64,000 nt of DNA from positions 186,001 to 250,000 of the forward strand of contig NW_020846216.1 in NCBI RefSeq assembly GCF_003704095.1, written 5' to 3'. The position numbers and the translations under genes were made by a program. The notes under the pieces were generated by a model. It saw only the letters and a list, made by a program, of their open reading frames with translations. It had not been told where the DNA came from and made no database searches. Shown here piece by piece: positions 15,669 to 49,157 of the stretch. The DNA comes from Pocillopora damicornis. Lineage: Eukaryota. Every line of letters begins with the position of its first letter. The first letter of the stretch is position 1.

Positions 15669-18600
15669 TTAAAAAGGTGAAATCTCACGCCGTAGATTTG
15701 CTCTCATGAGCTGAAAAACAATGAACGAAAAATAGAATCGGCACAAATCATTCATACACTTTGGACGTTTGATTAACCATTTCAGTAACCTATTTGACGT
15801 CCGAAGTCAATACTCAAATTCTCCCAGCGGAAATCACCACTCAGAGGTCAAACGAGGTCAAACTGGCTCCTCCCCCTTACGCCAGAAAAATTATTTCGAA
15901 TTTATTGCGTTGTGTAAACCATTCTGGAGGCGGAAGAGACTCCACCATGTGTAAGTTGTAGAATAAGGTAATTTTCGATCGAGTGTTGAAAGTAATTCAG
16001 GATTCCATTGGTTTTGATTTACTTTGCTTTGTGTTTGCTGCAGAAAACTCACCCCACCCTCTCAACCAATCAGATGCAAAGTAAAATCCAATCGCACCTT
16101 GGTCATCTGCGTTTTCCCGCTTTGGGCGGTACACTTGTTTTTAACCGAGTTGTCATTGGCTATTGACGTATTTCCTTTGCTCTGATTGGCCCTTGTACTT
16201 GCTTTGGTTTTGATTTACGACACTTAATCACAAAACCCTCACTGACCATAATTCTTTGAGAAACCTCATTCTATGTTAAGAGACCATCAGGAACCGTCTA
16301 TGAGGCTACATTTCAGAGAGAGACTTACCGATTTCCTCTCTTCTAACGTGAGTTCCTCTAGTCCCATAACAAACGCGACCTTGGTTAGCGCGCATTCGAC
16401 CGTCATGTCTCCCCCGAGGACTACTCCTAACTCAACAAGGCCCTGTGTGAATAACGAATCACAATCTAAAACTCGGACATTTTGTGGTTTTCGAGATTTG
16501 TTTAGCTTTAGTTCTGTAGCGGGTACATCTAAAAAGCATATCTTGATGAAAGCAAAAACGGCAAACGACCAGCTCGTTATCCTTCTATTAATCTTTCCTG
16601 GTACTGCCTAAGTCTTTCTTAAAATCTTTCCTAATATTTTCCTAGGAAATCTAAGTTCCTTCTCCTCAAAATTCTCTACAAAGCTGACGAGAAGATTGAG
16701 GTCAATGGAGAGTGTCAGTCACCTTCCTTCCCTCTCCCTTTAAATACTTAAAAATGTACACAATGAATAAGGTCCTGGAAAACATATTCTTACAAAACTG
16801 CATTAGGCATTTAGTCAGTACCTTTTCCACAAACTCGCTAGAAACATCATGTGGCCCCCCACGACAAGGACAACAGGTGACAATGACCACACCCTTGTCC
16901 GTCGCTTCTTTGACCGCCTCAGTAAGATCAGTTCTCAAGTCTGGTATATTGCCACTTCCATATGTTACCAGGACAACACCCTCAATTGGAGGCTCTAAAC
17001 ACCCTTTTATCTGAATATAAGCAAATAGAAGGTAACAGAAAGGATCAAAAGCTAGGCAAACATCATTTGGGTTTGGAGGGCAAATCCAGTGTAAATTTTA
17101 AACCCTTTGTAACTTGTTTTCTTTGCTCTAATTAATTCTTTGCTACCTGGCATTAATTAGCATCCATATTCTCCATACTGATCTCTCAACATTTCCTTTT
17201 CATTTTTTGTTGGAAAATCAAGAGCTTCTAAATTGGTGATCAAAGTTTTTCTACATCAATCTTCTAAAATGACATTACAACATACCATTTGTATTGGGAT
17301 ACCAGGGAACATAGGAAGTAATGCTATGTTTTGGCTCATCTTTGTGTGGAGTGTGAAACATCCTTTATGCCTTGGATCACCAGAATAATTCCATTCAACT
17401 AAGTAATGACAAAAATTATTTTCAATAAATACTGGTAGCTGGTCAACCTGTTAAATTAAAACAACTGTGATTGCATGCTACACAAGCAGAGCATGGTAAA
17501 ATCTGTGCAATGAGCTGCTGAAACTGGCAAAAATTAGGTGCTAAAATGCTACTAAACTACTTTTAAAGGGCTACTTTTATAAATAAATTTTATATAGGGC
17601 TTATCAGATCAATGACTCTAAAGCATGGCTCTCTTGAAAGGCAACCAGTAAAAGTACAAGTTAGCTTGGCAAAAAGGCAATGGCTGGAACTGATGAAATC
17701 TTTCACAGAGGCTTTGGTACTGTCCTGCTAGCTTGGTTAGTGTACAGAACAAGACATGAGCATACACCACAGACAGAAGAAATTAGTTATAAATAAACTC
17801 ATTACCATCAGTAAAAGGTTATGCACTTACTGCCTCCATTATTGCTTAGTTTTGCCAGAGGAGGATAGCTTGGTGAGTCAAAAACAGAAAAACTCTTTGC
17901 ATCTACTTTGGTTGATTTATTTCCTCTAAGAAGCTTTCCATTAAAGAAAATTGTTACCTGTAGAGGGGGAAAGTTGTTTCTTAGGTGCCTGATATATAAG
18001 TGCAAAAGTACATTAAAATGGGTTTTATTCAAGTCAAAATCGCTTGCATAGTAATCATTTCCTTTCACCTGGCTCACTTTTATCCAGCTTAATGCTACAT
18101 ACATTTACCCCTTCCACCCCTGAGATCTAGTAAATCTATGTTCCTACCTCTGAAACTGCATAGTGCCCAGCAAACAACAGTGCACCACCCAGGTTATCTT
18201 TTGCATCTGTCTCTTCCTCATAAATTGGGGTCTGTGATAAAAGGAGACATGTGAAGGTTTTAATGAACTTAACTGACCATGTCTCTGTAAAGTGAAAAAT
18301 AGTATTTGACCAGAAATAGATACTAGCACAGCCCAGAACCTATTGTAATGAGATTTCAAAACTTATGCAGAAATCCTAGATTCAGGCAATATAAGGGTTA
18401 TTTTTTTATTACTCACAAGAAAATTAAAAGTTTTGTATACTTTCTACTCAATTACAGATTTTAAAATTCAGGTACTTCACTGCTTCATAATGCAATTGAG
18501 TGTAGTTTTAGGGTGACTTTACCACAGGTTCCGTCTATCTCAGATGCCAATATTTTTACCCACATGATTCCTTGACAATCTTTTGATCTTGAATTGTTCT

Positions 18601-19811
18601 ATTAATCATACTGGCACTCAATCAGCCTACAAAATAACACTTGGAAATTTTAACATGGTTTACCTGTGCTCCAGTGAGGACCACAGGTTTCCCAAGATTC
18701 TCAAGCATGAAAGACAGTGCTGATGCAGTATAAGCCATAGTATCAGTCCCATGTAAGATCACAAACCCATCATAGTCATCATAGTTGTTGGCAATCTCTG
18801 TGGCCATGTCAATCCAGTCCTTTGTGCAAGTATCTTTTGATTCCCGTATAGTACCAGCCTTCTTGATATCATACAATATTTTGCTGTTATCCTGATCATG
18901 TACACTAAACAAAAACCAGTCAAATAAGCCAATTTTTTAATTATCTCAAGTGTAAGGATGAGAATAATTCAAAAACATTACCGGGTATGTACTTGTTGAT
19001 CATACATTTCTAACAGTTCATCATGATCAGTTGTTGAATGCCAAGTCTGTAATTTCTTTAGTTATCCATGAGATACCCAAGATCTAAATTACATATATAG
19101 TTAACATTTCCTCCACTTTATGGATATATTTTAAAATATTAGTTTTGAAAGTACAGCATTCAACAAGAACCTCCAAGTGATATTTTCTTCCCTTCTCATG
19201 TACCAAGTCTGGCAAAAGTTCTAACAGCTTCCCCTTGCAGAGGCACAAATCTAATCTGCCTGAGCTCAGTTGTTAAATTAATCTTTAAGATGGAAGGCTC
19301 AACAATTGAAAAGTGTATTTCAACAAAAGAAGATTTATTTTAATGAGCTTGCAAGCTTGAGTCCCCATCAGGCATCAAATCTCAGATCTTCAGATTCTGA
19401 AAGGTAATACTTACAGCATGGCCAATCTCTCTGTTACACCCACTTTTCTTGCTTGAGGCACAGTGAAAGCAGCATCATGAAGCAATGGATGCCTTTTCAA
19501 CTCTTCAATGAATAAGTCCAAGTGTAGAATGCAAGGCTCTGAAATAGGAGGATTTTTCCTTTCCACTCACTCTGATTCTCATTGTTTTTTCATGCCATAC
19601 ACACTTCATGATTGGAAATGATGCAAGATATCTTTATCAATTTCACCTTCACAAGGGAAGTGACATGCAAAACATCTAAAACTATTAAGTCGATGAAAAA
19701 TTATAAATTAATTGGTATCATACCATTTTCAGAGAGCTTTTTCATTCCAACTGTTCCTCCAGTATATAGAACAAGGACCAGTGAGGACTTGGCAGGCGTC
19801 ATGTCACTCAT
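15669..19811 (-). CDS. ASPG: Type I L-asparaginase-like protein without ankyrin repeats (ASPG-like paralog A, about 373 aa)
   Basis: Exons (minus strand) 19724-19811, 19415-19538, 18664-18904, 18148-18231, 17831-17957, 17286-17398, 16822-17010, 16329-16442, 15669-15710 sum to 1122 nt in one frame. Motifs [54 protein letters not shown]; the protein ends LMRANLRREISPF*. Confidence 0.88.
15970..16235 (+). repeat. Copy of the 250-bp dispersed repeat family
   Basis: gagtgttgaaagtaattc...caaccaatcagatgcaaa...gcgttttcccgc...ctctgattggc. Confidence 0.65.
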
Positions 19812-49000: not shown

Positions 49001-49157
49001 GTTCAGTCTGACTACGTGAGACGCCAGGCAAAAGTTGAGGGCAATTATTCGACAGCCCTTTACCTCCATCTGTTTTCTTCATTCCAATCGTTCCGCCTGT
49101 GTATAAAACTAAAACTTTCGTTTCTCGAATTTGCTTTGGCAAGGTAGAGCTCTCCAT
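43036..49157 (-). CDS. ASPG: Canonical L-asparaginase / 60-kDa lysophospholipase with ankyrin repeats (paralog C)
   Basis: Exons (minus strand) 49064-49157, 48793-48949, 47331-47568, 46854-46937, 46022-46148, 45277-45389, 44950-45135, gap 44571-44670, 44509-44570, 43864-44214, 43036-43230. Catalytic motifs intact: [35 protein letters not shown]. Ankyrins [10 protein letters not shown] and [10 protein letters not shown]. Confidence 0.92.
43258..43469. mobile_element. piggyBac-type MITE copy (reverse orientation)
   Basis: taaaccctttatacc...gggtcaaagggtcaa, full core. Confidence 0.65.
45801..46010. mobile_element. piggyBac-type MITE copy
   Basis: Family core; degenerate ends. Confidence 0.6.
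46205..46703 (+). mobile_element. Degenerate DNA-transposon fragment, possibly Crypton-like
   Basis: Short decayed [40 protein letters not shown] and a palindromic end aacaattattca...tgaataattgtt. Family assignment is from memory only. Confidence 0.35.

What the first reader, a model, noticed from the sequence alone, without database searches (positions are those of the whole stretch)
15669..49157. Three-gene asparaginase array with apparent division of labour: canonical enzyme, candidate pseudoenzyme and ankyrin-less variant
Seen: three co-oriented ASPG paralogs share exon sizes (84, 127, 113, 186/189 nt). C has all catalytic motifs plus ankyrins. B has ankyrins, a long N-extension and no N-terminal catalytic Thr. 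A keeps both threonines but has no ankyrins and no C-domain Tyr. Established: type I asparaginases are oligomers whose active sites draw on residues from neighbouring subunits. Inference: A and B have complementary losses (A has the Thr but not the Tyr, B the reverse), so an A/B heteromer could rebuild a composite site for a new substrate, or B could regulate C. This is the best candidate for an undescribed system in the window.
Basis: partly seen in the sequence, partly recalled or inferred. Interest (0 to 1): 0.78.

Follow-up and report, generated by a model that had tools for sequence, protein, structure and literature searches.

The report
Three diverged coral asparaginase paralogs
Three neighbouring coral genes descend from one asparaginase: one looks like the normal enzyme, one has lacked the catalytic threonine since before corals and sea anemones split yet is tightly conserved, and one is a short, expressed form without the ankyrin tail; a partnership between them is possible but untested.

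Summary
Three co-oriented ASPG (type I asparaginase / 60 kDa lysophospholipase) paralogs lie on the minus strand. They share exon sizes 84/127/113/186-189 and are the genome's only PF00710 loci.

- **C** is canonical, but about 90 codons are hidden by the gap at 44571-44670.
- **B** has a 125-aa Ser-rich N-extension, ankyrin repeats and Ala in place of the nucleophile Thr19. This Ala is fixed in all five B orthologs found (Porites, Montipora, two coral transcripts, Nematostella). B's asparaginase-like domain is its most constrained part (dN/dS about 0.05).
- **A** is an intact 373-aa, nine-exon gene without ankyrins. RNA contigs from three studies show all eight introns spliced as modelled. 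dN/dS is about 0.17.

The proposed "complementary loss" is only partly conserved. At the position aligned with Tyr308, A-type genes of other corals carry Tyr, while this lineage has Phe and another has Leu. A's Thr/Asp/Lys set is invariant.

Most likely these are old, functionally diverged paralogs: an enzyme, a conserved pseudoenzyme and a short variant. An A/B or A/C composite site is compatible with the data but untested. I found no paper describing the B clade.

The parts
43036..49157 (-). Gene C, the canonical ASPG. Exons: 49157-49064, 48949-48793, 47568-47331, 46937-46854, 46148-46022, 45389-45277, 45135-44950. About 90 codons are then hidden at the gap 44571-44670. The gene resumes at 44570-44509, then 44214-43864 (ankyrin) and 43230-43036 (stop).
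   Evidence: for the models. for ankyrin. One search shows its Tyr (codon 44964-44962) aligns to guinea-pig Tyr308. One search gives the gap arithmetic. A 99%-identical uninterrupted mRNA contig, L018, exists.
33386..41272 (-). Gene B, the ASPG paralog with Ala at the nucleophile position. Exons: 41272-40837 (N-extension plus TGGA), 40425-40281, 39384-39138 (GC donor), 38702-38619, 38091-37965, 37543-37431, 36514-36329, and 35714-35660, which runs into the gap 35198-35659. The gene resumes at 35197-35091, then 34408-34313, 34103-33753 (ankyrin) and 33562-33386 (stop).
   Evidence: Orthologs. Selection.
40868..40870 (-). B codon 135: Ala in place of the nucleophilic Thr (human/guinea-pig Thr19).
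   Evidence: Ala is present in all 5 B orthologs. Thr is present in 173 of the 178 other fetched proteins in which the motif was found; the remaining five are those B orthologs.
15669..19811 (-). Gene A, the ankyrin-less ASPG paralog of 373 aa. Exons: 19811-19724, 19538-19415, 18904-18664, 18231-18148, 17957-17831, 17398-17286, 17010-16822, 16442-16329, 15710-15669 (stop). The 3' UTR reaches at least 15304.
   Evidence: for the model. One search shows RNA contig joints at every predicted intron in runs of three studies. Searches cover the orthologs.
16831..16833 (-). A codon 319 (TTT, Phe), at the loop position where other A-type genes carry Tyr or Leu. B and C carry the Tyr308 equivalent in this loop.
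   Evidence: The codon is unchanged in RNA contigs covering 16821-17010.
35198..35659 (.). Assembly gap inside B. It hides about 27 codons (3' part of exon 8, 5' part of exon 9) and intron 8.
44571..44670 (.). Assembly gap inside C. It hides about 90 codons: exons 8 and 9 and the start of exon 10.
   Evidence: In the Oculina ortholog this interval spans about 2.2 kb.

Best explanation
This is an old tandem gene family, not a purpose-built three-part system.

**C** is the ordinary cytosolic type I asparaginase / lysophospholipase with an ankyrin tail.

**B** arose by duplication before corals and sea anemones diverged.
- It lost the nucleophilic Thr (Thr to Ala) and had its active-site motifs remodelled.
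- It has since been held almost unchanged.
- Inferred: it no longer hydrolyses asparagine. It acts as a ligand-binding, regulatory or scaffold pseudoenzyme through its conserved pocket, ankyrin repeats and disordered Ser-rich N-terminus. It may do so inside hetero-oligomers with an active paralog.

**A** is a stony-coral paralog related to B.
- A stop early in exon 9 removed the linker and ankyrin part.
- It keeps Thr19, Thr116, Asp117 and Lys188, and it is transcribed and correctly spliced.
- Inferred: it is an active amidohydrolase with altered substrate contacts (ESKD in place of DSSN) and a remodelled Tyr loop.

Shown here: gene structures, residue states, conservation, purifying selection, and transcription of A. 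Inferred: loss of activity in B, retained activity in A, and any interaction between the paralogs.
For: - These are the only three asparaginase loci in the genome.
- All three have intact ORFs and conserved intron phases.
- B orthologs from Porites lutea, Montipora, two coral transcripts and Nematostella all carry GGA plus HS(K/Q)D. They keep HGTDT, the Lys and the Tyr.
- Only 6 positions in the asparaginase domain are fixed differently in B versus 22 canonical sequences. Five of them sit in the TGGT, DSSN and EQRNDG motifs.
- B dN/dS against a relative's mRNA is 0.046 for the asparaginase domain, 0.08 for linker plus ankyrin, and 0.22 for the N-extension.
- Human ASPG T19A has no asparaginase or PAF-acetylhydrolase activity (PMC5443537).
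- A has orthologs in four other coral assemblies with the same exon plan and with TGGT, HGTDT and the Lys. Where exon 9 could be read in full (L011), it shows the same early stop.
- A dN/dS is 0.16-0.18.
- All eight A introns are spliced as modelled in RNA contigs of three studies, at least one of them a poly-A library.
- In the trees the B clade including Nematostella has 100/98 support, the A clade has 100/100, and A attaches next to B.
Against: - No activity, binding or interaction data exist for any of the three proteins.
- Loss of activity in B is inferred from one residue and from a mutant of the human enzyme. A pocket this conserved could instead carry a new catalytic function, for example with Thr116 as nucleophile.
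- A's aromatic loop position varies (Tyr, Phe, Leu) while the rest of its catalytic set is invariant. A simple "A is an ordinary homomeric asparaginase" model does not predict this.
- dS values are high (1.3-1.5) and partly saturated.
- A's placement on the tree involves a long branch, and no AU test was run.
Confidence: 0.6

Rival explanations
1. Trans-complementing heteromer. A pairs with B, or with C, in the intimate dimer. A supplies Thr19, Thr116, Asp117 and Lys188, and the partner's Tyr loop supplies the Tyr308 equivalent. The dimer then has one competent composite site and, with B as partner, one doubly defective site.
For: - Tyr308 acts from the adjacent protomer and activates Thr19 (PMC12128190).
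- In this genome A has the Thr but no loop Tyr, and B has the Tyr but no Thr.
- Across A orthologs the Thr/Asp/Lys set is invariant while the aromatic loop position drifts (Tyr, Phe, Leu). B's and C's Tyr-Ala/Ser-Thr-Gly motif is conserved. This is the pattern of constraint expected if A's own Tyr is dispensable.
- A and B group together in the trees.
Against: - Most A-type genes sampled still have the Tyr, so complementary loss is lineage-specific and not the basis of the family.
- B's Ala predates the coral-anemone split. In Nematostella, B has neither A nor C within 10 kb.
- A's loop is two residues longer and does not align to the mammalian loop by HMMER, so its homology to Tyr308 is itself uncertain.
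- No interaction or co-expression evidence exists.
Confidence: 0.15
2. B is a regulatory subunit of C, either prozyme-like or dominant-negative. It co-assembles into the C tetramer and tunes allosteric activation or localisation through its N-extension and ankyrins.
For: - The C-B head-to-tail tandem, about 1.8-2 kb apart, is conserved between this coral and Porites lutea.
- B keeps the Tyr loop that would serve a partner's site, and its domain is highly constrained.
- ASPG enzymes are allosteric tetramers (PMC5443537 and PMC13202022 abstracts).
Against: - The tandem is absent in Nematostella, and no B exons were seen within 10 kb downstream of the Oculina C ortholog.
- There are no interaction data.
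- Adjacency of tandem duplicates is expected by origin alone.
Confidence: 0.15
3. A and/or B are decaying or silent duplicates (pseudogenes), and the odd residues are neutral damage.
For: - Catalytic residues are lost.
- B has one non-canonical GC donor.
- Assembly gaps interrupt B.
Against: - The ORFs are intact with conserved splice phases.
- dN/dS is 0.05-0.18.
- B's substitutions are identical across distant corals.
- A mRNA is spliced in three studies.
- An uninterrupted B-type mRNA contig exists in a relative, with the same exon 3/4 junction.
Confidence: 0.03

Closest known systems
Mammalian ASPG / 60 kDa lysophospholipase (human hASNase1, guinea-pig gpASNase1; PDB 9s7y, 4r8k, 5dnc)
   Same: - Same two-domain type I asparaginase fold families (PF00710 + PF17763) followed by ankyrin repeats.
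- C has every catalytic residue, and its Tyr aligns to Tyr308.
- B and C share the overall architecture.
   Different: - B has Ala for Thr19 and His-Ser-Lys-Asp for Asp-Ser-Ser-Asn, plus a 125-aa N-extension.
- A lacks the ankyrin part and has a longer, unalignable Tyr loop.
Bacterial cytosolic type I asparaginase (E. coli AnsA, PDB 2p2d)
   Same: - A has the same domain content (asparaginase N and C domains only, about 340-370 aa).
- The catalytic-core exon of C scores best against AnsA.
   Different: A is not a bacterial-type gene. It shares introns, phases and exon sizes with B and C, and it nests among cnidarian ASPGs. Its shortness comes from a stop codon early in exon 9.
Pseudoenzyme partners of active paralogs ("prozymes", e.g. 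trypanosome AdoMetDC and deoxyhypusine synthase). Recalled from general knowledge, not tested here.
   Same: A catalytically disabled paralog is kept under strong purifying selection next to active paralogs, in a family whose active sites are built across a dimer interface.
   Different: No heteromer or activation has been shown for these coral proteins. The analogy is a lead only.

Membership tests
Type I L-asparaginase / ASPG family | Asparaginase N-terminal domain (PF00710) and C-terminal domain (PF17763) | tested here: met
   all three genes match both families exon by exon, above the curated cut-offs.
Type I L-asparaginase / ASPG family (catalytically competent member) | Nucleophilic Thr in the TGGT motif (Thr19) | tested here: not met
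   Met in A (codon 19754-19752) and in C (49091-49089). Not met in B, which has Ala at 40870-40868. B is therefore a homolog, but I do not file it as an active asparaginase.
Type I L-asparaginase / ASPG family (catalytically competent member) | Thr116-Asp117 (HGTDT) and Lys188 | tested here: met
   present in A, B, C and all orthologs examined.
Type I L-asparaginase / ASPG family (catalytically competent member) | Tyr308 in the C-domain Tyr loop, acting in trans | tested here: inconclusive
   C and B are met (alignment to 4r8k and 9s7y). The window's A has Phe and no Tyr in the loop. Other A-type genes have Tyr or Leu. A's loop does not align to solved structures.
Metazoan ASPG (60 kDa lysophospholipase) architecture | C-terminal ankyrin repeats | tested here: not met
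   B and C are met. A is not met: there are no ankyrin exons downstream, the stop falls in exon 9, and the RNA ends in an unspliced 3' UTR.
Asparaginase / lysophospholipase enzyme activity | Measured hydrolysis of Asn, Gln or lysophospholipid | not testable with these tools
   Needs recombinant protein assays.
Obligate complementing heteromer (prozyme-type) | Complementary active-site losses conserved across orthologs of both partners | tested here: not met
   B's loss is conserved in 5 of 5 orthologs. A's Tyr loss is not conserved. Tyr: L011, L014/P0270, L016/P0273, P0271, P0272. Leu: L015/P0274, P0275, P0276. Phe: this window and P0269.
Obligate complementing heteromer (prozyme-type) | Physical hetero-oligomer, with activity dependent on it | not testable with these tools

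The most novel reading that the evidence does not exclude
The hexacorallian B clade is a previously undescribed, roughly half-billion-year-old "pro-asparaginase". It is a Thr19-less ASPG that donates its Tyr loop in trans to an active paralog: A in stony corals, C elsewhere. The result is asymmetric, single-site hetero-oligomers whose activity or localisation is set by B's ankyrin repeats and its Ser-rich N-terminus, which may be a phosphorylation target. The drift of A's own Tyr (Tyr, Phe, Leu) would be a footprint of this dependence.
Probability: 0.12. Interest if true: 0.75.

Novelty: new variant of a known kind. Interest (0 to 1): 0.45.

Why it matters
ASPG is studied as a human-like replacement for bacterial leukaemia asparaginases. 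Its mechanism turns on Thr19 and on the trans-acting Tyr308 loop.

Corals offer a natural experiment on both residues:
- One paralog has had Thr19 replaced by Ala and has been frozen that way since before corals and anemones diverged.
- A second paralog keeps the Thr set but lets the loop Tyr drift.

If the two cooperate, this would be the first pseudoenzyme-partner arrangement in the asparaginase family that I know of. My searches of the paper library found no description of one.

If they do not cooperate, B is still a clean candidate for a non-catalytic function of the asparaginase fold, such as amino-acid or lipid sensing. That could bear on nitrogen handling in symbiotic cnidarians.

As it stands, the finding is a well-documented case of paralog divergence, not a new kind of system.

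Tried and rejected
- **Pseudogene reading for A and B.** Rejected on intact ORFs, dN/dS, RNA splicing and deep conservation.
- **The Phe in A as a sequencing error.** Rejected. RNA contigs of two runs cover the codon without a change, and a 94%-identical relative, P0269, has the same Phe.
- **Hidden ankyrin exons downstream of A.** None found down to position 8000 at a permissive E-value, and the transcript is unspliced beyond the stop.
- **A as a horizontally acquired bacterial AnsA.** Rejected on shared intron positions and tree placement.
- **Deep synteny of the array.** C-B is conserved in Porites lutea but not in Nematostella. It was not seen within 10 kb in Oculina. LPMO-A is conserved in one other coral contig.
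- **dN/dS against Porites.** dS was saturated, so I replaced that comparison with closer relatives.
- **Full-length annotated A-type proteins.** Not retrieved. The word search only sees proteins of 0.55-1.75 times the query length, and A can be queried only exon by exon.
- **Literature.** Searches for pseudo-asparaginase or coral ASPG paralogs found nothing relevant.
- **Not done.** AU test of A's position, any structure prediction, and any read-level check of B or C expression in this species (the one read-laying run went to A).
- **Disclosure on spliced models.** Joined models were built only inside scripts, for alignment, trees and dN/dS. They were not sent to search or fold tools.
- **Disclosure on typed sequence.** One 32-residue string, copied, was typed into the script as a scoring guide.
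- **Disclosure on the big representative search.** I used it early to obtain full-length references.
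Full report
**Where and what.** The window is G000:C2851:186001-250000. It is AT-rich (39% GC) and contains eight runs of N. A six-frame search of the whole 234-Mb genome with Pfam Asparaginase (PF00710) and Asparaginase_C (PF17763) finds matches at only three places. All three lie in this window, on the minus strand. An all-against-all comparison of minus-strand open segments shows three sets of homologous exons.

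**Gene models.** Single exons cannot retrieve full-length relatives in the word search. I therefore ran the representative search with the catalytic-core exon of C. I used the full-length hit P0005, and later named coral proteins, to place the exons by tblastn. I refined every junction to splice sites with conserved phase.
- **A** is a complete nine-exon ORF of 373 aa (19811 to 15669) with GT-AG at every intron.
- **B** runs from 41272 to 33386. Its seven complete exons are followed by exon 8, which runs into the gap at 35198-35659. Coding sequence resumes immediately after the gap and continues through two ankyrin exons to a stop.
- **C** runs from 49157 to 43036. After exon 7 comes intron sequence and then the gap at 44571-44670. 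Coding sequence resumes in mid-exon directly after the gap.
- B's intron 3 has a GC donor (CAG|GCAAGT). An mRNA contig of a relative shows the same exon junction.

**The gaps.**
- Coral B orthologs have 27 residues between the two flanks of the B gap, and the flanking phases (1 nt before, 2 nt after) are compatible.
- C orthologs have 90 residues between the flanks of the C gap. In the Oculina ortholog this interval holds two exons plus part of a third, spread over about 2.2 kb. The 100-N gap therefore understates what is missing.
- The gap at 31810-31881 lies between B and the LPMO genes and touches no ASPG exon.
- I did not fill any gap. Continuity is plausible but not proven.

**Residue states.** The alignment against cnidarian, deuterostome and other ASPGs is.

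| Motif | C | B | A |
|---|---|---|---|
| Nucleophile loop | YTGGTIGM | YTGGALGW | YTGGTVGM |
| Substrate motif | DSSNM | HSKDQ | ESKDT |
| Thr116-Asp117 | HGTDT | HGTDT | HGTDT |
| After the TGSQ/TGAQ motif | [13 protein letters not shown] | [13 protein letters not shown] | GAQTPIYEEETDA |
| Lys188 context | STKV | ALKV | STKV |
| Tyr loop | DQYATGK | DSYATGR | GGPHDVSSEFVEK (no Tyr) |

- HMMER alignment to guinea-pig and human structures shows that the Tyr of C (and, by alignment, of B) is Tyr308.
- A's loop is longer and drops out of the HMMER alignment after CRGG.
- Pfam confirms ankyrin repeats in B and C.
- A stops 13 codons into the exon homologous to exon 9 of the others. No ankyrin exon lies downstream.

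**Is B's substitution real and old?** Named homologs fall into two hexacorallian groups.
- C-like: Oculina, Porites lobata, Desmophyllum, Exaiptasia, Nematostella (554 aa).
- B-like, all with N-extensions: Porites lutea (711 aa), Montipora foliosa (743 aa), two transcript-derived proteins (733 and 734 aa), and Nematostella (734 aa).
- Every B-like protein has Ala at the nucleophile position. Of the 178 fetched proteins in which the motif could be located, the other 173 have Thr.
- Under a strict criterion, only six positions in the asparaginase domain are fixed in B and differ from a residue near-invariant in 22 canonical sequences. Five of them sit in active-site motifs: Thr to Ala and Met to Trp in the TGGT loop, Asp to His and Asn to Asp in DSSN, and Arg to Leu in EQRNDG.
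- Against the uninterrupted mRNA contig of a relative (L017), B's dN/dS is 0.046 in the asparaginase-like domain, 0.08 in linker plus ankyrin, and 0.22 in the N-extension.
- So the "dead" domain is the most constrained part of the protein. That argues for a remodelled, functional pocket and against decay.
- In the human enzyme, T19A abolishes both asparaginase and PAF-acetylhydrolase activity (PMC5443537).

**Is A real?** Contigs from RNA libraries of three separate studies were laid on 15300-20100. They show joints at every one of the eight predicted introns, to the base once the stated cut offsets are applied. They also show an unspliced terminal exon running at least 365 nt past the stop.
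- The Phe codon is unchanged in those contigs.
- One contig in one run shows an alternative donor inside exon 7 that skips exon 8.
- An ortholog on a 1.96-Mb coral contig (L011) has the same nine-exon plan, a 380-aa ORF, and a stop 17 codons into exon 9. LPMO genes lie upstream, as in the window.
- dN/dS between the two is 0.16-0.18 at dS about 1.3.
- Three more A-type loci (L014, L015, L016) show the same exons, with TGGT, HGTDT and the Lys.

**The Tyr in A-type genes.** A word search with A's exon 7 found eight exon-level proteins from coral assemblies. Together with the loci, the position occupied by Phe in the window reads as follows:
- Phe in a 94%-identical relative (P0269).
- Tyr in P0270-P0273 (including L014 and L016) and in L011.
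- Leu in P0274-P0276 (including L015).

On the A subtree, (L014, L016) group together and winA groups with (L011, L015). Tyr is therefore the likely ancestral state, with two independent losses. The preceding TCCPCRGGPHDVS is almost invariant. So the window's "A lacks the Tyr" is true, but it is lineage-specific.

**Phylogeny and synteny.**
- With outgroups, cnidarian ASPGs form one clade (SH-aLRT 98). Within it, A joins the B clade (SH-aLRT 93), and A has a long stem.
- With more A rows and a careful search, the A clade has 100/100 support and B including Nematostella has 100/98. A attaches on the branch next to B.
- A and B also share the Ser-Lys-Asp variant of the DSSN motif.
- The simplest history has the B/C split before Hexacorallia radiated, and A and B sharing an ancestor that still had Thr. 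No AU test was run, and long-branch effects are possible.
- The C-B tandem (1.8 kb apart here) is also present in Porites lutea. In Nematostella, B sits between an amine oxidase gene and a UBR-type ligase gene. No B exons were seen within 10 kb downstream of Oculina C.

**How it most likely works.** Shown:
- three conserved paralogs;
- B fixed without the nucleophile but with an otherwise intact and highly constrained domain;
- A expressed, short, and keeping the Thr/Asp/Lys set.

Inferred:
- C is the working asparaginase/lysophospholipase.
- B is a pseudoenzyme that binds a ligand or partner and acts through its ankyrins and N-extension.
- A is an active but specialised amidohydrolase.

It rests on a correct premise: Tyr308 comes from the adjacent protomer and activates Thr19 (PMC12128190).
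- The pattern of constraint fits it. A's Thr, Asp and Lys are invariant while its loop aromatic is free to change, and B's and C's Tyr is fixed.
- The complementary loss is not conserved in A orthologs.
- B's change predates any evidence for A.
- Nothing here tests interaction.
- I put the heteromer reading with A at about 0.15, and a B-regulates-C reading at about 0.15.

**Known or new.** All three genes belong to a well-known family, and public annotation already labels the orthologs "L-asparaginase" or "60 kDa lysophospholipase-like". Searches of the paper library found no description of a Thr19-less ASPG clade or of coral ASPG paralogs. That is absence in that library only. I class this as a new variant of a known kind.

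**Limits.**
- Spliced models were joined only inside scripts. They were not submitted to search, fold or multimer tools.
- B and C expression in this species was not examined at read level.
- Species names for the ENA and Logan contigs are not given by the tools.
- The assembly size and contig count remind me of a pocilloporid coral genome. That is recollection, not a test.

**Earlier notes of this scan.** Three notes on this window were consulted.
- The TGGA note and the note that A ends after the domain are both confirmed here.
- The LPMO note is confirmed as to family only (LPMO_10 by Pfam).

Noticed in passing
window 21371-22225 (+), 24206-25051 (+), 26182-27063 (-): Three single-exon ORFs of 281-293 aa match Pfam LPMO_10 (PF03067; E-values between 1e-21 and 1e-22). 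They lie between B and A. The same order, LPMO genes followed by an A-type asparaginase, is found on another coral contig (L011).
   Followed up: partly
window 39137-39132 (minus strand), B intron 3 donor: This is a non-canonical GC-AG intron (CAG|GCAAGT), where A and C have GT. A relative's mRNA contig (L017) shows the same exon 3/4 junction peptide, so the site is evidently used in that relative.
   Followed up: partly
window 16000-16140 ~ 36043-36270; 36851-36961 ~ 37759-37869 ~ 45897-45998; 39834-40012 ~ 43310-43440: Short repeated elements inside or beside introns of the three paralogs translate to similar peptides. They are probably small interspersed repeats, not exons.
   Followed up: no
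window 16860 joined to 16094 (run X1 only): One RNA contig uses an alternative donor inside A exon 7. It skips exon 8 and continues in 15682-16094. This is a minor or aberrant isoform that would remove the Tyr-loop region.
   Followed up: no
L010 (Porites lutea) 1-33164; L013 (Nematostella) 10001-26817: The C-then-B head-to-tail pair is conserved in Porites lutea, with a NACHT/TPR gene downstream. In Nematostella the B ortholog is flanked instead by an amine oxidase gene and a UBR-type ubiquitin ligase gene.
   Followed up: partly
window 30626-31447 (-): Two adjacent ATG-started ORFs of 171 and 101 aa lie downstream of B and have no Pfam match. They sit beside the intergenic gap at 31810-31881.
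   Followed up: partly
L016 9816-13589 (-): A 1257-aa ORF with reverse-transcriptase and endonuclease domains (LINE-like) lies just downstream of the A-type gene in another coral contig.
   Followed up: no
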